From: Hyphochytrium catenoides
Taxonomy: Eukaryota; Protista; Hyphochytriomycota
DNA: 64,000 bases
Reading direction: 5' to 3'
Assembly: GCA_900088475.1 (NCBI GenBank)
Contig: FLMG01001623.1
Location: 62,001-126,000 of the forward strand
The translations under genes and the position numbers were made by a program. This document shows positions 1,933-30,579 of this stretch, piece after piece; positions within the stretch are counted from its first letter, which is position 1, and each line of letters starts with the position of its first letter. The notes under the pieces were generated by a model. The model was given only the letters and a program-made list of their open reading frames with translations, was not told where the DNA came from and did no database searches.

Positions 1933-3484
1933 ATGGCAGACAATAGCTCAACGGGAACAGCTGGCGACGATAAGGAACTCCAGGCAGAGAGAGGCGCCCT
2001 TAAAAATTCCTGGTCGCTGTTAGCAGAAGGCGAAGCAACCGGACCCGCTCGGTGCAAGACCTTACGAGGACTTTGGGTAACGACATTGGAAGAAGATGAA
2101 TGGCTTGACAACCTATCACTCGCGTATCCACATCAGTTTGATAAGGTCATGGCATGGAGTTTGTCTCAAGAGTCCACTGGCTCTGGAAAGGCTAGTCGTG
2201 ACAGTTCTTCGACGACCGGAATCCCACGCATTATTCATCAGATCTGGTTGGGCGGGGATCTTCCTAGTGATTTGAGATCGTTCTGCGAGTCATGGCGCGC
2301 TCATCACCCGCAGTGGCAGTATGTAAGACTCTTTTCCATTGAATAGATGCACTTTGAAGTGACTGAAACTTTAGCCTGCTACACTATGAAGGCAAGCTCT
2401 CTCATCCTTCGCTGATCTTCAGAGGCTATGGACCGATACTGAGATTAGCAGCGGCGAGCTGAGACTGAGAAACCAGGTAATCCTCTTTTCTTCGGAGTTG
2501 AGAGCTCAGCTAGATTTTCTCACACTGCTCGGCCTTATTTCAGGCTGCTTTTGACGCTGCGAAGAATTATGGGGAAAAGGCCGATATACTCCGCTATGAA
2601 CTGCTTCATACCTTCGGAGGTCTCTATGTAGACTGCGACTTTGAGTGCCTAGCCTCCTTCGAGATATTCCACCAGGTACTGGTCCTGCAGAGCCTGATAT
2701 ACTTTGCAACTAACAGTGGGAACTGCCGCAGAACTTCGACTTCTTTTGTGGATTCTCCAATACCGGAGCTGTGGAGCTCAATAATGCCTTGCTAGGCTCG
2801 AAAGCTGGCCATCCTATATTGGGACACTTAATAGACGATATTGGCCATCAATTTAGGACGGCTAGCCTAGTTGCATCCTATCTAGGAAGTGGCAATTCGG
2901 GTACCAGGCCACTTGCTGAACTAGGTGGGAACCTCCTGACATGCCGCGTTATTCTCTGCTCTGACAGCATGTGGTTTCTAGTTATTCCTGCGCTAGTGCC
3001 TTCATTAGCCAGGAACGCTGGCCGCTCAACGGGGCAGACAGAGGACGTTGTCATACCGGTTATAGATCGTGCCATCCGTGTTGGGGAGTACGAGGACGAA
3101 TCCAAGAGAGGCTCATCACCGCCATTAGGGACGATCGGCAGAACGGGACCAGGTCTCTTAACTCGAGTGGCTATAAAGTACTACTTGAGTCATGCCCAGA
3201 AGTATCCTCAAGAAAAGGAGTTGTTCCGCCTCTCAAGCGTCTTCTTTGCCCCTGAGCAGTTCTTCTACCCTATTCCGAATACGGAACAAATGCCACCAGT
3301 TGCGGACAGTGGACCATCAAAGAGCTCGGAGAAGGATGAACACCTGGAAGCTCTTGGCAGTACAAGACGATTGCCGTTGAGGAAGTCGTACGGCCTTGCC
3401 TCAGCCTATGCCGTGCACCATTGGCGGCGGTCGTGGATGCCACAAACTACTGCAAAGGGCACAACCTCGGCAAGCACGGTGTAA
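1933..3484 (+). CDS. GT32 glycosyltransferase (Gly_transf_sug, OCH1/SUR1-like DxD family)
   Basis: Motifs IPRIIHQIWLGG, SWRAHHPQWQY|RLWTD, KADILRYELLHTFGGLYVDCDFECL (DxD), NNALLGSKAGHPIL, RTGPGLLT, YAVHHWRRSW. Introns at 2323-2422, 2477-2543, 2676-2731 and probably near 2901-2979. Confidence 0.9.
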
Positions 3485-4894
3485 CGCCATCACTAGCTCC
3501 GAAATGGCCCCCTGGCACTGATCCTTGTTTAAGTGGCTCTGAAAGCACCGTGACTAGATTGCCTTATTGAGCAGCCCATTGGACGCTTAGCACAGAGTCT
3601 TATGCCTCTCATGTATCCGAGAGAAAGAATTTATATTATAGATGTACACATACAATTTGCCCTTGTAAATGTTATTTGATGTCCGAAAAGGGCAGGTGGT
3701 CCAGTATCACCTCCAGGACGACCTCCCAGGCAGATGGCTCCAGAACAGCCTAGGAACCCTGTTGGTCAAGGTATTCCCACGGCCACGGAAGAAATTTTTT
3801 GCACGCACTAGGAACGAAGAGGTCTATCATCACCAGCAGGTAGAACTTAGCACACGCACGCAGCAAAGAAGACTTTGACATCCTTTCCTCTTCCTAATAA
3901 TGTGCTTCCATGCACTGTTCAAGACCTCCACTCACCTAAGAGACACGAAGAACTGGGTTGAAGCCGCTCTTGCATCTCTTGAGGGCCTGGAGGAAGAAGA
4001 GCAGCCATTGCATCTATCAAAGAGGAAGGAAGTAAAGGTGAAGGTGCCGCTTGCTAGAGCTCGTGCCAGTGCGTTTTGGTCCTTTGGTCCTGGGCCGCCC
4101 TTCCCTGCTTCTGATCCACAGGAGACAGCAAATCTTTTGCAGCTGCCAAACCGATCCATAGTCCCCATTTAATTCTTGCATGATCTTTCATCACAGTTCC
4201 TATAGGAGTCTGGGACCTGGATATTTTATTAAAAGAGGGAATACGCTTGCTCTCGTTACCGAATTCAACAAACTACTTTGGTAGTGGATCCAGTGATCGG
4301 GCAATAATAAAAGGGCCCTCTAGTGTTCTTTTTCTATGTCTTATTTTCGGGCAAAAGTCGTTCCGTGTCGGTTGATGGGTGAGAAGAAGTGGGAAGTTCT
4401 GCTGTTCGCACTTTCTCTTTTTGCTCTTGTTGCATCGGCCTGAAGCCTGGCACTTGCCGCGACAGCCTAAGGGCCAGCAGCGCAACGCAGCAGCACGTTC
4501 CTTACACCCTTTCAACCTTCATCCTACAAGGGAACTAGTGCATGGTTCCGTCCAGCGCTGCCACTGGTTTATGATGTAAGGATACAAGGGGCGTGAGGAC
4601 TATACTGACGAGACACCGGCATCTATCCAGGGTGTATCCTTGTCAGCACCATGCCCCTTAGCTTGAGACGTTCACCATGATGAAGCGGGAGGAGGACTGA
4701 TCCTCGTCTAAGGGCCTGGAGAAAGATTGATATCTTTGTCTAAGAGAGCCATCTGACTGGGCTATCAACCGCCAGCAGGAACGCATCGATGGGGTTATTA
4801 TGACAGAGTGCTCCAGGAGGCTTTAGTACGCCTGCCTAGCTGGTGAAAAGGCTGAATAGCGTCCCGCGCCTTCCTCTGTGGTGTATACCGAGAT

Positions 4895-7110
4895 ATGGAG
4901 GGAATTCTAAGGCAGCCCAGCTTCCCTGAAGCCTGGAATTCTCACAAGGAGCGATGGACCATGCAGAGGATACTTGAAAACGAGGAGGAATCCGACGAGT
5001 CTCCACGGCACTGCTATGATGGGATACACCCGATTGACAGCTCCAGAGGTTTACGACAGGTAAGATATTGTGCCTGCAAATGGCCCTCCCTCTCTGACAT
5101 ATCCTCCTCCCAAACCTGGCTACTCCTTTCCCAAAATGGCCGATATGATCGCGGCACTTCGCAGAAATGGAGCCAAGGAGGAAGAGATAAAGGAATGGGC
5201 GAGCTATTCAAGCCGGCAAGCTCCCGGCCAGTCGCTGATCGGACAATTCAGGTACATTGAGGTCCCTGCTCTATAGGATCGGGGCATATAAGGCATATCA
5301 GGTTGTTTCTCACTTATCCGACTTTTAGAGGCCAGGAGATCGGGAAGCAAGTGAATCTAGCTCTGAAGAATCAGAGTCGAGTACTGTCGAACAAGAACCA
5401 GGGCAATGTGGAGGTCAAGAAGAAGAAGAACGAGCCCTTGGAGGCGGGGATGGAGTAGTCAACGCCCGACCGCGCGGGGGAAATGGCAAAGCTAATAAGG
5501 ATGATTTTCTGGAGCGCCTGAACACTCTAAAGATGCTCTTAGAATGTGGTCACCTCTCTGAAGAAGACTACCGGGAGAGGAGCAGTCAGATCATTAATGC
5601 ACTGACGGGAACATCTGCTAGAGCACCACAGCCAAAGAAGAGGAAATCAAGGCGCTTACAGCCAATTTTACAAACTGTTGTCGCTCATGGGCCGCCAAAT
5701 TTTGACACCATTGCCATGGAGAGGTAAGAGCCACGAAGCATGTCTGGAGGGAAGTGCTAGAAAGGGGACTAGATGGTCTTTGAGAATTTGCTCATCAGGG
5801 TTTGAACACTTCCCTCACTCGTAACGTAGGGCTGAGAAGCTTACTTTTGATGTGCAAACCTTGGAGTGGGTGTCGTGTCAGATATACGTCAGGATAGACC
5901 ACGTTCCGTTCGCCTCTGGGCAACTGCGGAACGCTTACTACCTTAGAGAGTATGGCCAAGATGGGCACAGTCCTAGCGAACTCTTAGTGGCCAAAACTAG
6001 CATCCATGCGGCTGATGCGGCTTCGTACCTCAGGTTTAGACCGTATTCCTTTTTCTTCGAACTCTTTCTCTCTTCCTCTACTCCGATTTAGCTTTATTGT
6101 ACCGTTTCAGCTAATCTGGCTCATGGTACTTACGGTGCCATGTTGGGCCTAAAAACACTAGGTACTGGTGTGGTGACTGTCCATGAGTTGTGACTTTCAC
6201 AACATCTTCTCTTCTTTTTATGTCGCGGTGGTCTCGTTTGGTCACTATGGAAGCTACATCCTCAACAAAGCTCGTTTTTTGTGCTTCGTCTACTCCCGGC
6301 TTGGTCTGACTAATATCTGGGCTTCCACGCTGCTCTTCTCTCGATTAGTGATGTGGAGATGCAGGCGTGCTGCTCTCACTACGCGGAACTGTACAACCAC
6401 CACGATCCTCCGCGCAAGGTGCACTATGCAAGATCGTGGCTCCTGAAGTTCAAAGGTCGAAATAGCATGGTGGCAGGGGTTGAGGAATACATTCATGGAA
6501 AGTATGTGAAGTATAGCAACAACAACGGATTCGTTGGGACTGAGACTAGCACCAACGAGGAGCGAGAGAGGAACACGCCTCAGGCCTTCTCCCACTTCTC
6601 CTTCGTCGCTTCGGACTACCGGCTCATGATAGTTGACGTTCAAGGTATTTATTTCTAAGGGCAACACAGATCGCCCCAATCTTCCTCTTACTTGTTCTGG
6701 GCCTTACCGACCTCTTACTTCTGTCTGTGTCTTTTAACATTGCACCTTATTCCTCCCAAATTTACACGCTAGGTGTCGATGACAAGTATACCGACCCCCA
6801 AATCCACACCCCGGACGGCTATGGCTTTGGCTCTGGCAATCTTGGCATATTCGGCATTGAGCAGTTCCTGAAGACCCATCGCTGCAACCATATCTGCCGC
6901 TGGCTGGGCCTGCGCTCTCTACATAACAGAGTGAAAGAGGGTGGGACCGCTGCACCCCACTACCGCATGCCCCACAAAGAGATCAAGAAAAGTACCAACA
7001 AGATCAGCTCTACTGTCAATTCCTACTCGCGTTCTCTCACCANNNNNNNNNNNNNNNNNNNNNNNNNNNNCCGCTACCTGAGGATGATTTGCTGTATGAG
7101 TGATGACTAG
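4895..7110 (+). CDS. Alpha-kinase (eEF2K/MHCK family) with an upstream SHOCT-like segment; 3' end unresolved because of the N-gap
   Basis: Motifs PFASGQLRNAY, LVAK, DVEMQAC, VEEYIHGKYVKYSNNNGFV, RNTPQAFSHFSF, MIVDVQG|VDDKYTDPQIHT, GFGSGNLG, FLKTHRCNHICRWLGL (Zn-binding His/Cys). Exons join in phase through GT-AG introns. Confidence 0.93.
7043..7070. other. Assembly gap (N run) in the 3' part of the alpha-kinase gene
   Basis: 28 N characters. Confidence 0.99.
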
Positions 7111-7559
7111 GGCGATTGCCACACATGCCTACCTCCAAGGACACAACCAAGCACTGGAGACGGTGACCATTCGATGTGTAGTTGTTCCTTGGGAGCAATC
7201 GATTTACAGATAGTAAATAGAACGAGAGACAGACAGATAGACAATCGAGAGACTGCATGAAGGGGTTGTAGCTTGATAGGAGGGCATTTCGGGGAGGAGA
7301 GCTAGGGGAAAAGATAAGTAAGCGACATAGGTAAACTGAGGGAGGACACGGCTAAGTCGGGTAGGATCTTGAAGTAGATGATGGGAGCAAAGCACACAGA
7401 GAGCAAGCGATCCAGGATCTCCAGGCACAGATGTACATTTCGTATGTATCTAATTAGTATGATGGCACATTTTTCCAGCATTGGCTTCCCTGCCGTGAAA
7501 TGGATCAACCTCAGGATGTCAATAGCCTCATGAACCTCCGCCATGTTTGGCTATCCTAA

Positions 7560-26454: not shown

Positions 26455-29400
26455 CTACTCATTGTCGTTGTGATGTACCACTTGCTTCGGGTTCAGAATT
26501 AGCTGCATGCCTTGCCGTTCAAGACAATTGTGAAAGGCTCTGATGCCGGCAGACTCACATTGCTCAGCAGCGACGTCCTTGCCTTCCCGAGCCACTCCAT
26601 AATGGCAATCTTGTTTCACAGCAGCCGAATTATAAATAGAGAGCCCTCCGTAGCAAGAGCTAACGGACAGAGGAAGATCGTCACTGTCAACAAATGTGTA
26701 CTGGAGAACACTGCGACCTCTTGAGTCCCGGATGAGCTTGGACTCGAAAGTTTCGACATCTGCGAAGGACATTGGGTTGCTCTTGGTGATGGGGTTTGCG
26801 CAGGATACATCCCAGCTGATAAATTTCTTGGCAAGGAGAGAATAGGGCATTGGAGAAGAAAAAGCTGTTCTGCTACGGAGTCCAAAGGAATGCGCCACGC
26901 CATCGGTATCCCAGCCCAGATGGAGATCAGACTCTAGAAGTATAAGGAACGAGGCCTCACCCCCATCCTCTCGGGAGAAGGAGAGGTTGCCTGCCGTGGT
27001 AAACAGCCCGCGGACTTTCGTCAACAGATAATCACGCAGGAACAAGGTGTTGCTCGCTGCAGCAGAACAACCTATGGAACTGTTCCCATCGGCTTGAGGG
27101 ACTGAGACATAGTGCTTCATGTCCTGGAAACCATCATTTGCTTTCTTTCGCCACTGCTCAAGGACCTGAAGCTCTGGGTCTGCACCGTCCTGGGTCACGG
27201 TGACAATGGTAACGTTTCGGAATAACCTGCCGAGGCTAGCAATATGAGGTAAGGTGTGCTTGAATCGAAAGGCAGTGTCTCTCCGAATCACGGTTCCGAT
27301 AATAACTCTAGATCTCTGCATAAGTTTGTACCCGCGATCAACGACGTCATTGACATCTGAGCCGATCTGATCTGGCCGCTTTAATACCGGATACTCTGCA
27401 GCTGGCAAGTCATCAGAGCCAATGAAGTTGACTTCTTGCAGGGAAGGACCAAGGTTCGGTGCCTGACGCACTAAAAGGCTGTAGCCTTCTCTGGTCCATT
27501 CAAGAAGGTAGCGTTCTATAGTCATTGCAGGCGAAGAGTGGTTCCGAAATGACTGGACCTTAACTGAGCCCTGTATGCGATAGCAACTTGATCCTGCTGG
27601 GTAGTTCTCCACCATCATCATTCCTTCTCCTGTGTGCTGCTGAAGGTACTCCCAAATGTATGTACGGCCTTCCTGTCTACTTAGCTTGGCCATGTTCCGA
27701 TGGAGGAAAATAATCTCACCGTAAGGATCGTGCTGTACCATCGTCATGCCGCAATAGTAGCTCTCAAAGCCCGCTCCTCTCACCCTAGATACTACTCTGC
27801 CGGCAGTCCCAGCAGGCTTAGAGATCATATAAAAGGACTGGCCCCATTTCATCCAAGCAAAGCGGAAGAGATCCTTGTCTCCCCAAAGAAAAAGTTTGAG
27901 CACCGCATCATAGTGCTCAACGAAGAAGGCAAGCACTCCAAGGGGTCCTGCGTTTCTGCGTCTGTCAATTACTAGCTGGCCACTTTCTTGCTCGTACCCG
28001 CTATTACTGGTCGAGAGGTTCAGCGCATCCCAGAAAAGTGACGCGCTGTCAAGGCGCGCGAAGAGGCTGTGCTGGACATGCCAGAAATCAGGCCAAAATA
28101 TGGCCCCATGCTTCTTGTACTGAGAGGTATGGAAGAGGTAGGTGGGATCCCGCAGTGGGTAGTTATCAGCATCAAGAAGTAAGACCTGGTCAAACCTCGA
28201 GTGGATAACTGCGTATGGTTTAATCATGAAACCCGTTTGGAGCGCAGGTGAAAGGTGGGCCTGCCGTAGAGTGACGTTGAAGGTGGACGTTAGGATCTTC
28301 AGAGGAACAGAGTCGGTCTCCATTTCTCCTTGTCTGTACCAAAGCTCTACCGGCAGTTTGCACCCTGTCTGCTGGAGAAGCTTTAGAAGGCTGTAAGCCT
28401 CGATCCAGATTTTGTCATGCACGCAGATGACAATCCCACGGCTAGATCTACCTTTCTGTTCTCGGTATAAAGCCTTAAAGCTTTTGACGGGTGGCAGCTG
28501 CTGTTGCAATCGTTGGACATGGCCGTCCAGTTCCCTTTGAAACTGCACGATATCGGGCACAGCCTTGCATGCAAATGGTGCGATGAAGGTCCTGCAATCT
28601 TTGAGCATCAAGGCGAAGTGCTCTCCAGAAGCCTTGTCACGATACTCACAAAATCCAGAGTCAGCTTGCGGCACCAGATAGGTGCAGTCTCTGTCAGATT
28701 CCAACAACCGCTTCCCCATAGGGTCACAGGAAGCTGTAGGTCTCCAACCGAGGCATTCCCACTGGCTCTGCTCTAGAAAAGAAACCATTTCCTCCCAGTT
28801 GACCAGCAAAGAGAAGTTTCTTTGAAACCATTGTAGGGTCTCGTTGCACCTCAAAGGATGACGCCACCTAGTTCCTGCTACGGGAACATGATAGCGGACG
28901 GCCTGTTGAGTATCGTAGAACTCACAAGAGCCGCCAGCCATGAAGGAAAAACTCTCATTGCACAGCCGGTCTTGCCGCGAGGTTAGCAGTCCCCGATTCT
29001 TGCTTCCATTCTCTTGCGCACGGTATCCAACACACTCAATGGAATGTCTCTTCTGAAGGGTCTCTAGCTGATCTCGGGTAGTGATAAGAACAGGCTCTCG
29101 AAGCTGTAGGCCACCGAGGTTATGGCATCGAAAGAGGCTTCTCGGCCTATCGCAAGTATTGGCATGAATCCTAACTCGTTTGTCACTCTTCACGTCCAGA
29201 TACTCGCAGTATCCCCACTGATCTCCTCGAATAAAAGTGCCGCAACCTCTGTTCCCTGACAGAACGTGTCTCCCTTCATGAGGATCGCAACTGTCCAACC
29301 CTCTCCAACCGATACATTGAAGGCTGCCCCAGTCGAAAGCAGCAGGAACCTGTTCCAGATCCTGCCAGACAACCGCATCCCGGCCAAGGACCTCTAGAAG

Positions 29401-30579
29401 ATCCCTGCAGGTGTACTCTCCAACAGTACTTTCGCAACCGGTGATCTCAGGGATGAGAGCCTTGACAAGTCTGCTATTTTGAAGATTAGTGTACTCGCAA
29501 TATCCCGCAATATCCTTTGACGTTGCTATCACATCCGAGCAGCCCAAGTCTCTACTGAGCACTCGCGGGCCGTCCGGATCACAGTCCATAGTCGCCCGCC
29601 AGCCCCTACACTGCAGATTGGGCCAGAGACGCTGGAGCTCAGATGCACTGTTAACGACCTCATAGGCAGCCTCGTCTAGCAGCGAGACGAGGCTGTCGCA
29701 GCGGACCTCTCCCTCTACACTGTCACATCCTCGGCTGAACGCACGAAATCGATGATCTGACGTCTTGTTCCTGAACTCACAAAATCCTGATGACCATGCG
29801 CGAGTTACCTGGTGACATGCTAGATCCTTGGAGGCGTCTCGATCCCCGTTGGCCTCGCAGTTGACGGTACCTCGCCACCCTACGCATTCGATGTCGGGGC
29901 TCTGCACCAGTGCACGCAGGTCTTCTAGCGTCTCAACAGGGGTGTACATGTCCTCCTCCGCGAGAATGTAGAGGAGATCTTGGCAGCGGAAGCGTCCTTC
30001 TAACCCCTTTTGAGGACAGCCGTCATCCAGTAGATAGCGGTAGATTGTTCCATCTTGCTGGCTCTGGAACTCACAGTAGCCAGCTAAGGCACGGCTCACA
30101 GCATGGGTACAGTCCCGGGGCAGCCCCTGCGACGTCTTTGGGCGTCCCATTGCAACTCTGTGTGGTCTATCTGCGCTAATCTGCTCACAAGAGACAGGCA
30201 TCCAACCAATGCAAAGGAACTTCTCATTCCGACGCCGTTGGCCCTTGTCTCCGACCATGTACCACAGGTCCCGGAGCTCTGTTGGAGACGAGAGTTCCTG
30301 AATGCTGACTGCTGGGAGACTTAGGAGTGAAAGGGTGGTCGGAGAGGAAGTACTAAGGAGCCAGGTTAGCGTAAGAAGAGATAGGGAGAGGAACAGAAGG
30401 AGAAGTGTCACAGCTGTCCAATGCCTCTTGAGTCGGAACCTAGGCACTCCATTGATAACGCCGTGGTCTTTTGCATATTCCTGTCCTTCTCTGCCTCTTC
30501 CTTCTCCGCGTTCAAAGTCAGGCGCTTCCCCAGAAGAAGGGTGCAGCCCTCGCGTACGAAAGCGGTTATAGTTCTTCAT
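26455..30579 (-). CDS. Type II membrane GT71 (MNN2/Mannosyl_trans3) alpha-mannosyltransferase with six Cys-rich modules and a C-terminal CAP59/GT69-like domain, intronless
   Basis: 1374-aa ORF with a TM segment near aa 55-77, RGIVI, GCKLPVELWY, GFMIKPYAVIHSRFDQVLLLDADNYPLRDPTYLF, GAIFWPDFW, EQESGQLVID, WGDKDLFRFAW, GMTMVQHDPYGEIIFLHRN. Confidence 0.92.
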   Translation of the reverse strand: MKNYNRFRTRGLHPSSGEAPDFERGEGRGREGQEYAKDHGVINGVPRFRLKRHWTAVTLLLLFLSLSLLTLTWLLSTSSPTTLSLLSLPAVSIQELSSPTELRDLWYMVGDKGQRRRNEKFLCIGWMPVSCEQISADRPHRVAMGRPKTSQGLPRDCTHAVSRALAGYCEFQSQQDGTIYRYLLDDGCPQKGLEGRFRCQDLLYILAEEDMYTPVETLEDLRALVQSPDIECVGWRGTVNCEANGDRDASKDLACHQVTRAWSSGFCEFRNKTSDHRFRAFSRGCDSVEGEVRCDSLVSLLDEAAYEVVNSASELQRLWPNLQCRGWRATMDCDPDGPRVLSRDLGCSDVIATSKDIAGYCEYTNLQNSRLVKALIPEITGCESTVGEYTCRDLLEVLGRDAVVWQDLEQVPAAFDWGSLQCIGWRGLDSCDPHEGRHVLSGNRGCGTFIRGDQWGYCEYLDVKSDKRVRIHANTCDRPRSLFRCHNLGGLQLREPVLITTRDQLETLQKRHSIECVGYRAQENGSKNRGLLTSRQDRLCNESFSFMAGGSCEFYDTQQAVRYHVPVAGTRWRHPLRCNETLQWFQRNFSLLVNWEEMVSFLEQSQWECLGWRPTASCDPMGKRLLESDRDCTYLVPQADSGFCEYRDKASGEHFALMLKDCRTFIAPFACKAVPDIVQFQRELDGHVQRLQQQLPPVKSFKALYREQKGRSSRGIVICVHDKIWIEAYSLLKLLQQTGCKLPVELWYRQGEMETDSVPLKILTSTFNVTLRQAHLSPALQTGFMIKPYAVIHSRFDQVLLLDADNYPLRDPTYLFHTSQYKKHGAIFWPDFWHVQHSLFARLDSASLFWDALNLSTSNSGYEQESGQLVIDRRRNAGPLGVLAFFVEHYDAVLKLFLWGDKDLFRFAWMKWGQSFYMISKPAGTAGRVVSRVRGAGFESYYCGMTMVQHDPYGEIIFLHRNMAKLSRQEGRTYIWEYLQQHTGEGMMMVENYPAGSSCYRIQGSVKVQSFRNHSSPAMTIERYLLEWTREGYSLLVRQAPNLGPSLQEVNFIGSDDLPAAEYPVLKRPDQIGSDVNDVVDRGYKLMQRSRVIIGTVIRRDTAFRFKHTLPHIASLGRLFRNVTIVTVTQDGADPELQVLEQWRKKANDGFQDMKHYVSVPQADGNSSIGCSAAASNTLFLRDYLLTKVRGLFTTAGNLSFSREDGGEASFLILLESDLHLGWDTDGVAHSFGLRSRTAFSSPMPYSLLAKKFISWDVSCANPITKSNPMSFADVETFESKLIRDSRGRSVLQYTFVDSDDLPLSVSSCYGGLSIYNSAAVKQDCHYGVAREGKDVAAEQCESAGIRAFHNCLERQGMQLILNPKQVVHHNDNE

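What the first reader, a model, noticed from the sequence alone, without database searches (positions are those of the whole stretch)
26455..30579. Candidate two-enzyme glycan assembly line: GT71 fused to a second CAP59/GT69-like GT-A domain
Seen: after a complete GT71 domain (about 27700-28440) the same ORF continues with a ~290-aa domain (26458-27330) containing SRVIIGTVIRRD, LGRLFRNVTIV, FLILLESDLHLGWDTDGVAHSFG, WDVSCAN, LSVSSCYGGLSIY, QCES...FHNCL..QG.QLILNP. Recall: this pattern fits CAP59/CMT1-related (GT69-like) proteins, and fungal GT71 (MNN2/MNN1) and GT69 (CMT1) are normally separate alpha-mannosyltransferases. Inference: one Golgi protein may make two linkages. The second domain looks degenerate (ESD for DxD, CES for CEH), so it may instead be a non-catalytic acceptor-binding module.
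Basis: partly seen in the sequence, partly recalled or inferred. Interest (0 to 1): 0.72.

Follow-up and report, generated by a model that had tools for sequence, protein, structure and literature searches.

The report
GT71 enzyme with degenerate CAP59-like domain
One intact protist gene joins a normal-looking GT71 mannosyltransferase to a second sugar-transferase-fold domain of the CAP59 type. That second domain has lost several residues its relatives almost never change, so it is more likely a helper module than a second enzyme.

Summary

The C-terminal domain gets no Pfam hit itself. A profile built only from outside relatives matches it at 134 bits (E 6e-34 against 1.84 billion proteins). 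Of 47 sampled relatives, 37 match PF11735 (CAP59_mtransfer). Its AlphaFold model (pLDDT 84.5) is a GT-A fold, closest to yeast Mnn9 (Z 19.1).

The GT71 domain keeps 43 of 44 near-invariant family residues. The CAP59-like domain has changed 7 of 21, where the median for relatives is 1. The changes include ENDSxDxT to TQDGADPE, DxD to ESD and CEH to CES.

Five other loci in this genome carry the same fusion, and most have lost these motifs in different ways. No stand-alone copy was found.

Outside this genome I found the fusion only on one truncated Logan contig, and in no paper. The scan noted the same fusion on other pieces of this genome.

Most likely this is a GT71 mannosyltransferase with a catalytically decayed accessory GT-A domain. 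A true two-activity enzyme remains possible (about 0.3). It is a new variant of a known kind, of moderate interest.

The parts
26455..30579 (-). Whole single-exon ORF, 1374 aa plus stop
   Evidence: No N. Allelic variants give 22 synonymous and 15 non-synonymous changes and no stop, pN/pS 0.20, p 1.8e-6.
30352..30423 (-). Hydrophobic membrane anchor, aa 53-76, after a short basic N-terminal tail. This is the type II topology typical of Golgi transferases (inferred).
   Evidence: Read from the translation. No topology predictor was run.
28540..30222 (-). Six tandem Cys-rich modules of about 95 aa, starting at aa 123, 232, 324, 422, 516 and 609. The motif is C-x-G-W-R...C...C...G-[YF]-C-E-[YF]...C...C.
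   Evidence: No Pfam family. The same module precedes GT71 domains in oomycete proteins and precedes a stand-alone CAP59-like domain in a Pterocystis protein, P0122.
27550..28482 (-). GT71 (PF11051, Mannosyl_trans3) domain, aa about 700-1010
   Evidence: Pfam E 5.2e-37. It keeps 43 of 44 columns that are at least 90% conserved in 109 relatives. It is 35-44% identical to oomycete and bacterial PF11051 proteins.
28165..28173 (-). DAD (D803-A-D805), the DxD metal and donor motif of the GT71 domain
   Evidence: These columns are invariant in alignment A4.
26461..27375 (-). CAP59_mtransfer-related GT-A domain, aa 1069-1373
   Evidence: Outside-only family HMM 133.8 bits, E 6e-34 at Z 1.84e9. AF2 model pLDDT 84.5, pTM 0.87. 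Closest solved fold is Mnn9, Z 19.1. Foldseek finds GT-A enzymes. Atlas TM 0.73 to CAP59/GT2 clusters.
27172..27195 (-). TQDGADPE loop after strand 2, where the family has E-N-D-S-x-D-x-T
   Evidence: E1129 is Glu in 113 of 117 relatives and Thr here. S1132 is Gly and T1136 is Glu here.
26926..26934 (-). ESD at the end of strand 4, where the family has DxD
   Evidence: The first Asp is present in 115 of 117 relatives and is Glu here. The second Asp is kept.
26551..26559 (-). CES at the start of the last helix, where the family has C-E-H
   Evidence: His is present in 115 of 115 aligned relatives and is Ser here. Helix position is from the model.

Best explanation
The gene encodes a type II membrane glycosyltransferase of the secretory pathway in an oomycete-related protist. 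A stalk of six Cys-rich modules carries a canonical, probably active GT71 domain, a retaining Mn-dependent GDP-mannose alpha-mannosyltransferase type. Directly after it comes a second GT-A domain descended from the widespread CAP59_mtransfer-like family.

The fold and the homology of the second domain are shown. Its function is inferred. In this copy the nucleotide loop, the first DxD aspartate and the family-invariant histidine are all replaced, while fold-defining residues are kept. I therefore take it to be a catalytically impaired accessory domain that supports the GT71 domain through stability, acceptor binding or donor binding. The extra GT-A domains of B3GLCT and COLGALT1 work this way.

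The ancestral fusion was probably bifunctional, because one paralogue (contig C499) still has near-canonical motifs. The catalytic residues then decayed independently in most copies after duplication.
For: The architecture is a single open frame. The second domain belongs to the family: the profile search gave 1616 hits at E<=1e-3 and 499 at E<=1e-10, and the leave-out HMM scored 133.8 bits. 37 of 47 relatives match PF11735 at E<=1e-3, and P0125 passes the cut-off at 57 bits over positions 2-222 of 242. GT-A fold.

Decay: 7 of 21 near-invariant columns are changed, against a median of 1 and a mean of 0.97 in 117 relatives; only 3 relatives have 6 or more. The DxD column reads ESD, DSD, DIE, DPR and DPP in the paralogues, and the CEH column reads S, H, I, Q and I. 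That is scatter, not a new shared motif. The GT71 domain is intact at 43 of 44 columns. Among paralogues the GT71 domains are 42-48% identical and the CAP59-like domains only 21-30%. The terminal branch is 1.57 against a median of 0.87.

The gene is under purifying selection, pN/pS 0.20. Precedents are B3GLCT (PMC13597200) and COLGALT1 (PMC12003778). The best sequence match in the PDB is in fact the non-catalytic GT1 domain of COLGALT1, E 6e-7.
Against: Several probable active-site residues survive: D1131, D1134, R1182, D1218, D1274, E1342, H1350, Y1316 and Y1327. Glu can stand in for the first Asp, as in the Glu-Asp-Asp motif of COLGALT1's catalytic domain (PMC12003778). GT-A enzymes can also lose a metal-binding His and use water instead (PMC7185993).

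I could not map the invariant His onto a solved active site residue by residue. By position it sits where GT-A enzymes have the xED motif, not the C-terminal His, so what its loss means is uncertain. pN/pS within the domain alone is 0.38 from 9 variants and is not informative. No biochemical, expression or contact data exist.
Confidence: 0.55

Rival explanations
1. True bifunctional enzyme. Both GT-A domains are active, and the protein adds two different linkages, or alternating sugars, to one glycan. LARGE1, the EXT proteins and K4 chondroitin polymerase work this way. The CAP59-like domain would use a non-canonical E-x-D site.
For: Two GT-A domains lie in one lumenal chain. ExD, R1182, D1274, E1342 and H1350 are kept. 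Paralogue C499 has near-canonical motifs, so the fusion was probably bifunctional once. In this genome the CAP59-like domain occurs only fused, at 6 loci with no stand-alone copy found, so any CAP59-type activity would have to come from these proteins. The whole gene is under constraint.
Against: Two positions that are essentially invariant in relatives are replaced: Glu in 113 of 117 and His in 115 of 115. Three more nucleotide-loop positions are also changed. The paralogues do not share a replacement motif. The domain evolves faster than the GT71 domain.
Confidence: 0.3
2. Nucleotide-sugar-binding but non-transferring domain. It would still bind a donor and a metal for folding stability or for regulation, like the GT1 domain of COLGALT1.
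For: The best PDB sequence match is COLGALT1 GT1, E 6e-7. Both Asp of the nucleotide loop and D1218 are kept. PMC12003778 shows that such a domain exists.
Against: E1129, S1132 and T1136 of the nucleotide loop are changed. There are no binding data. This is a sub-case of the best explanation, and its 0.2 is counted inside that explanation's 0.55, not on top of it.
Confidence: 0.2
3. Artefact. Either two neighbouring genes are run together by a misassembly, or this is a decaying pseudogene.
For: No RNA run holding the stretch was found. One paralogue, C499, has a one-base frame break in the assembly.
Against: The frame is continuous for 1374 aa with no N. The same GT71-to-CAP59-like order is found in five other loci of this genome and in an independent Logan contig. 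Contigs from three public runs cover the whole gene between them, including the border between the two domains, though no single contig spans the gene. They show 22 synonymous and 15 non-synonymous variants and no stop.
Confidence: 0.03

Closest known systems
Fungal GT71 alpha-mannosyltransferases (Mnn1, Mnn2, Mnt2; Pfam PF11051). First structure: Mnt2p, PMC13756512.
   Same: The domain at aa about 700-1010 passes the Pfam cut-off. It keeps DxD and 43 of 44 near-invariant residues.
   Different: It is only 35-44% identical to its nearest relatives, which are oomycete and bacterial rather than fungal. It carries a Cys-rich repeat stalk and a second GT-A domain. Donor and linkage are unknown.
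CAP59 / CMT1 / CAP6 family (CAZy GT69, Pfam PF11735), cryptococcal alpha-1,3-mannosyltransferases (PMC12493134)
   Same: The C-terminal domain belongs to a large family whose members mostly hit PF11735: 37 of 47 at E<=1e-3, and some pass the cut-off. It has a GT-A fold. The motif order is the same.
   Different: The domain itself fails PF11735. Its closest relatives are about 280-370-aa stand-alone proteins of protists, phages, giant viruses and bacteria, not fungal GT69. The DxD, CEH and nucleotide-loop residues are altered. I did not compare it with CAZy GT69 or with any fungal GT69 sequence, so GT69 membership is untested.
Yeast Mnn9 (GT62, PDB 3zf8)
   Same: It is the closest solved fold: Z 19.1, rmsd 3.2 A over 233 residues. 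The spacing of R1182, the DxD position, D1274 and E1342 resembles Mnn9 R209, D236, D280 and E364. This rests on spacing alone and is an inference.
   Different: 14% identity. It is a different CAZy family, and no residue-level superposition was available.
Two-GT-A proteins with one inactive domain: B3GLCT (PMC13597200) and COLGALT1/GLT25D1 (PMC12003778)
   Same: Two GT-A folds lie in one lumenal chain, one canonical and one with eroded motifs. COLGALT1's GT1 domain is the best PDB sequence hit for the second domain.
   Different: In those proteins the inactive domain is N-terminal and arose from other families. Here it is C-terminal and CAP59-derived. No interface has been shown.
Oomycete tandem GT71 proteins of about 1150 aa, for example P0002 (Peronospora) and P0006 (Achlya)
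   Same: They have the same Cys-rich module and the same GT71 subfamily, and they hold two transferase modules per chain.
   Different: Their second module is another Cys-repeat plus GT71 unit. None has the CAP59-like domain.

Membership tests
GT71 / PF11051 Mannosyl_trans3 | Pfam model matched above the gathering score | tested here: met
   128.1 bits against a cut-off of 22, E 5.2e-37.
GT71 / PF11051 Mannosyl_trans3 | DxD motif and family-invariant residues present | tested here: met
   D803-A-D805 is present, and 43 of 44 columns that are at least 90% conserved are kept.
GT71 / PF11051 Mannosyl_trans3 | GDP-mannose-dependent alpha-mannosyl transfer | not testable with these tools
   Needs an enzyme assay.
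CAP59_mtransfer / PF11735 (GT69-related) | Pfam model matched above the gathering score (28.8 bits) | tested here: not met
   The window domain has no PF11735 hit even at E 10. The best paralogue, C499, scores 24 bits.
CAP59_mtransfer / PF11735 (GT69-related) | Significant homology to proteins that themselves pass PF11735 | tested here: met
   The paralogue profile hits P0125 at E 1.1e-33. The window domain alone hits it at E 3e-9 with Z 1.84e9. P0125 scores 57.2 bits on PF11735. The outside-only HMM hits the window domain at 133.8 bits.
CAP59_mtransfer / PF11735 (GT69-related) | GT-A fold | tested here: met
   Model pLDDT 84.5. Mnn9 Z 19.1, with many GT-A enzymes at Z above 12. Foldseek gives 139 hits at E<=1e-3, and all 50 listed are GT-A-fold transferases or nucleotidyltransferases.
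CAP59_mtransfer / PF11735 (GT69-related) | Conserved catalytic-site motifs of the family (E-N-D-S-x-D-x-T, DxD, C-E-H) | tested here: not met
   They read TQDGADPE, ESD and CES. 7 of 21 near-invariant columns are changed, against a median of 1.
CAP59_mtransfer / PF11735 (GT69-related) | Classified in CAZy GT69, with alpha-1,3-mannosyltransferase activity | not testable with these tools
Activity needs an assay.
Tandem GT-A protein with a pseudo-transferase domain (B3GLCT / COLGALT1 type) | Two GT-A domains in one polypeptide | tested here: met
Tandem GT-A protein with a pseudo-transferase domain (B3GLCT / COLGALT1 type) | One domain catalytically dead | tested here: inconclusive
   Motif erosion is shown, but ExD and several site residues remain. 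There is no assay.
Tandem GT-A protein with a pseudo-transferase domain (B3GLCT / COLGALT1 type) | The two domains pack together to form the substrate site | tested here: inconclusive
   The complex prediction gave no verdict.

The most novel reading that the evidence does not exclude
The protein, or its near-canonical paralogue on contig C499, is a single-chain two-activity glycan polymerase. The GT71 and CAP59-like domains would alternate to build a mannose-containing wall or coat polymer of a hyphochytrid. The six-member paralogue series would then capture a bifunctional enzyme turning step by step into an enzyme-plus-pseudoenzyme pair.
Probability: 0.25. Interest if true: 0.6.

Novelty: new variant of a known kind. 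Interest (0 to 1): 0.42.

Why it matters
Glycosyltransferases with two GT-A domains are few. Each studied case, such as LARGE1, COLGALT1 and B3GLCT, has taught something about how glycans are assembled or how dead enzyme domains are reused.

This genome offers six natural copies of one GT71 plus CAP59-like fusion, running from near-canonical to clearly eroded second domains. That makes a ready-made series for asking what a GT-A domain does after it stops catalysing.

The result also extends the CAP59 family, known mostly from the Cryptococcus capsule, to a large and mostly unannotated set of protist, viral and bacterial proteins. It points to uncharacterised glycan synthesis in the pseudofungi. 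It is not a new kind of system.

Tried and rejected
- **Word-index protein searches** with the C-terminal domain alone and with the full protein scored on aa 1050-1374 found nothing. This reflects low sensitivity, since the exhaustive profile search then found 1616 relatives.
- **Direct Pfam, PDB and own-genome searches.** A direct Pfam scan and a PDB sequence search of the domain gave nothing. PF11735 searched against the own genome also gave nothing, but its controls did not ring, so that result is uninformative.
- **Single-sequence AlphaFold** gave a useless model, pLDDT 33. It was replaced by the alignment-based model.
- **Complex prediction** of the GT71 domain against the CAP59-like domain gave no verdict, score 0.00. 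My alignments were not used. This is no evidence either way.
- **Metagenome scans.** The scan with the single domain found no relative.
- **Expression.** No RNA run holds the gene, so expression is untested.
- **Cys-rich repeat.** The atlas search of one repeat gave only sub-threshold rows.
- **Pseudogene or misassembly** was considered and rejected.
- **GT62 or GT2 membership** was considered and set aside. Relatives hit PF11735 far more often than GT2 (37 against 12 of 47). Mnn9 probably ranks first among solved structures because the PDB holds no close relative of this family: no GT69 entry appeared in either fold search, and the best PDB sequence match was E 6e-7.
Full report
**Observation.** Pfam gives one significant family, PF11051 Mannosyl_trans3 (GT71), at E 5.2e-37 and 128 bits against a cut-off of 22, starting at aa 713.

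**Anatomy.**
- A short basic N-terminus is followed by a hydrophobic anchor at aa 53-76.
- Six Cys-rich modules of about 95 aa start at aa 123, 232, 324, 422, 516 and 609.
- The GT71 domain covers aa about 700-1010, with DAD at 803-805.
- A short conserved tail follows.
- The C-terminal domain covers aa 1069-1373.
- The type II Golgi topology is inferred from this layout and was not computed.

**What the C-terminal domain is.**
- Direct searches failed. There was no Pfam hit, PF11735 included, no PDB sequence hit, and nothing from the two word-index protein searches.
- Language-model features pointed to nucleotide-diphospho-sugar transferase, CAP59_mtransfer and GT2 clusters at score 0.97, which is a lead only.
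- The window's own genome holds paralogues of the domain. A profile of these (A1) searched against 1.84 billion representative proteins gave 1616 hits at E<=1e-3 and 499 at E<=1e-10. Most are stand-alone proteins of about 280-370 aa.
- To avoid circularity I built an HMM from 116 outside sequences only. It matches the window protein at aa 1069-1373 with 133.8 bits, E 6e-34 at the full library size. The window domain alone hits P0122 at E 1.8e-19.
- Of 47 sampled outside members, 37 match PF11735 at E<=1e-3, 12 match Glycos_transf_2 and 11 match Glyco_tranf_2_4.
- P0125 passes the PF11735 cut-off (57.2 bits, positions 2-222 of 242) and P0128 just passes at 29.3 bits. Paralogue C499 reaches 24 bits, below the cut-off of 28.8.
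- So the domain is a remote but secure relative of the CAP59_mtransfer family. By Pfam's own threshold it is not a member.

**Fold.**
- With a 121-row alignment (A3), AlphaFold gives pLDDT 84.5 and pTM 0.87, with the alternating strand-helix order of a GT-A fold.
- Foldseek against the PDB finds only GT-A enzymes at the top: COLGALT1 at 5.5e-8, Mnn9 at 6.2e-8, then LH3, hyaluronan synthase, GlfT2 and TarP.
- The Foldseek-independent search ranks yeast Mnn9 (3zf8) first at Z 19.1, rmsd 3.2 A over 233 residues. LH3 and COLGALT1 follow at Z 16.4 and mimivirus R699 at 15.6.
- In the ESM Atlas the nearest models (TM 0.71-0.74) are CAP59_mtransfer/GT2-labelled clusters from phages and bacteria.
- By sequence profile, the best solved relative is the N-terminal GT1 domain of COLGALT1 at E 6e-7. 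Its authors showed that this domain is non-catalytic (PMC12003778).

**State of the catalytic motifs.**
- I took the 21 columns that are at least 88% conserved in the 117 outside rows of A3 (the 116 used for the HMM plus the domain part of P0122), leaving out the start Met column.
- The window domain differs at 7 of them: E1129T, S1132G, T1136E, N1183D, D1216E, F1310Y and H1343S.
- Outside members differ at a median of 1 and a mean of 0.97. Only 3 of 117 differ at 6 or more.
- Glu1129 is Glu in 113 of 117. The first DxD Asp is Asp in 115 of 117. The His of C-E-H is His in 115 of 115 aligned.
- Kept here are D1131, D1134, R1182, D1218, G1227, D1274, Y1316, Y1327, C1341, E1342, H1350 and N1363-P1364.
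- The GT71 domain of the same protein keeps 43 of 44 columns that are at least 90% conserved in 109 relatives.

**What the invariant His does is not settled.**
- In the model, C-E-H sits at the N-terminus of the last helix, before the last strand.
- In the GT-A core described by Taujale et al. (PMC7185993), that position holds the xED motif. The metal-binding C-terminal His lies after the last strand.
- The spacing R1182, E1216/D1218, D1274, E1342 resembles Mnn9 R209, D236, D280, E364 (PMC3787745). On that spacing, the His389 equivalent would fall near H1369-H1370.
- This rests on spacing alone. I had no residue-level superposition.
- The same paper shows that loss of a metal-binding His can be compensated by water. 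Motif loss therefore lowers the odds of activity but does not exclude it.

**Paralogues and distribution.**
- In the window's genome (61.0 Mb, 4759 records) the family profile finds the CAP59-like domain on six contigs only: C499, C3031, C3331 (this window), C1131, C2954 and C3655. In every case it lies downstream of a GT71 domain in the same frame. No stand-alone copy was found.
- Two further GT71 loci lack it. C1751 has a second weak GT71-like half-domain instead, and C2327 is a plain 590-aa open frame.
- The paralogues read DSD / E-H (C499, near-canonical), DIE / E-I (C3031), DPR / E-Q (C1131), DPP (C3655, truncated) and E-I (C2954, whose DxD lies in an N gap).
- This is scatter. They have not converged on a new shared motif.
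- Fold-defining motifs are kept in all copies: GW..DG.A.SFG, W.V.C.N, SCYG, FH.CL and NP.Q.
- GT71 domains are 42-48% identical among paralogues. The CAP59-like domains are only 21-30% identical.
- In a FastTree of the family, the four full-length own copies group together with weak support (79). They sit inside a well-supported clade (98) of 12 rows that includes a Pterocystis protein and a Chrysoparadoxa protein. The window copy's terminal branch is 1.57 against a median of 0.87.
- C499 has a one-base frame break inside its GT71 domain in the assembly. I cannot tell a sequencing error from a pseudogene.

**Outside this genome.**
- The best GT71 relatives are oomycete proteins at 35-46% identity.
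- The oomycete proteins of about 1150 aa are tandem units of Cys-repeat plus GT71, twice over.
- None of the 120 listed relatives carries the CAP59-like domain when searched with the family HMM. The one exception is P0015, a 1008-aa protein cut off by the end of a 3.9-kb Logan contig. It has Cys repeats, GT71 and the first 110 residues of the CAP59-like domain (E 1e-15), and it looks like the counterpart of paralogue C2954 in a related organism.
- None of the 150 best CAP59-like representatives has a GT71 domain. Two of them (P0122 from Pterocystis, and P0234) have the Cys-rich module in front of a canonical CAP59-like domain.
- Full-text searches for GT71 with GT69, GT71 with oomycete, and PF11735 or PF11051 returned no paper describing such a fusion.
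- I could not query InterPro architectures, and only the best 150 of 1616 hits were visible. The rarity claim is therefore provisional.

**Is the gene alive?** Logan contigs of three public DNA runs cover the gene and show 37 allelic differences: 22 synonymous, 15 non-synonymous and no stop. The single one-base deletion is in a 3.9x contig and is probably an error. With 940 synonymous and 3182 non-synonymous sites, pN/pS is 0.20 (binomial p 1.8e-6). By part it is 0.14 for GT71, 0.20 for the Cys repeats and 0.38 for the CAP59-like domain. The last figure rests on 9 variants and is not significant. No RNA run holding the gene was found.

**Organism.** The record count (4759), the run years (2011 and 2017) and the affinity to oomycetes fit the published Hyphochytrium catenoides assembly, which has 4758 scaffolds plus a mitochondrion and GAIIx plus HiSeq runs (PMC5795050). 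This is an inference. That paper does not mention glycosyltransferases.

**Mechanism and verdict.** Shown:
- there is one gene;
- the GT71 domain is canonical;
- the second domain has a GT-A fold and CAP59-family descent;
- family-invariant residues have eroded in this copy and in most paralogues.

Inferred: the GT71 domain does the chemistry and the second domain is an accessory, as in B3GLCT (PMC13597200) or COLGALT1. I put this at 0.55. That figure includes a variant, at about 0.2, in which the domain still binds a donor without transferring it. I put a truly bifunctional enzyme at 0.30 and an artefact at 0.03. The complex prediction meant to test contact between the two domains returned no verdict and counts for nothing.

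The finding is a new variant of a known kind. Earlier first-stage notes of this scan describe the same stretch (s1-343173, s1-347965) and the same fusion on two other pieces of this genome (s1-349969, s1-371303).

Noticed in passing
window 28540-30222 (-): There are six tandem Cys-rich modules of about 95 aa, with no Pfam family and no informative atlas hit. The same module precedes GT71 domains in oomycetes. It also precedes a canonical stand-alone CAP59-like domain in a Pterocystis protein (P0122) and in P0234. It therefore looks like a shared stalk or lectin-like module of protist Golgi transferases.
   Followed up: partly
P0001-P0012 (oomycete proteins): Oomycete proteins of about 1100-1400 aa are tandem units of Cys-repeat plus GT71, twice over, so they hold two full GT71 domains per chain. 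I did not check whether both keep their catalytic residues.
   Followed up: partly
L021 (G000:C499) about 6381-6562 (-): The paralogue whose CAP59-like domain is closest to canonical (DSD, E-H; PF11735 24 bits) has a one-base frame break inside its GT71 domain, at ESGQ|LLID. It is either an assembly error or a pseudogene.
   Followed up: partly
L018 (G000:C1751) 3866-6526 (+): This GT71 paralogue lacks the CAP59-like domain. After a low-complexity stretch it carries a second, weak GT71-like half-domain at aa 535-675, E 4e-10.
   Followed up: partly
L016 (G000:C1131) 3226-7230 (+): This is the most diverged fused paralogue, with DPR for DxD and E-Q for E-H. It has long Glu/Arg/Ser-rich low-complexity inserts inside the CAP59-like domain and the longest terminal branch in the tree (2.72).
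   Followed up: no
window 26455-30579: Public contigs show 37 allelic differences in 4.1 kb, about 0.9%, with bubbles at roughly half depth at 26797-26851 and 28984-29029. This fits a heterozygous diploid.
   Followed up: partly
L023 (Logan SRR28521184 contig, 3952 bp): A contig from an unrelated public run encodes a close counterpart of paralogue C2954 with the same fusion, cut off by the contig end. I could not identify the organism of that run.
   Followed up: no
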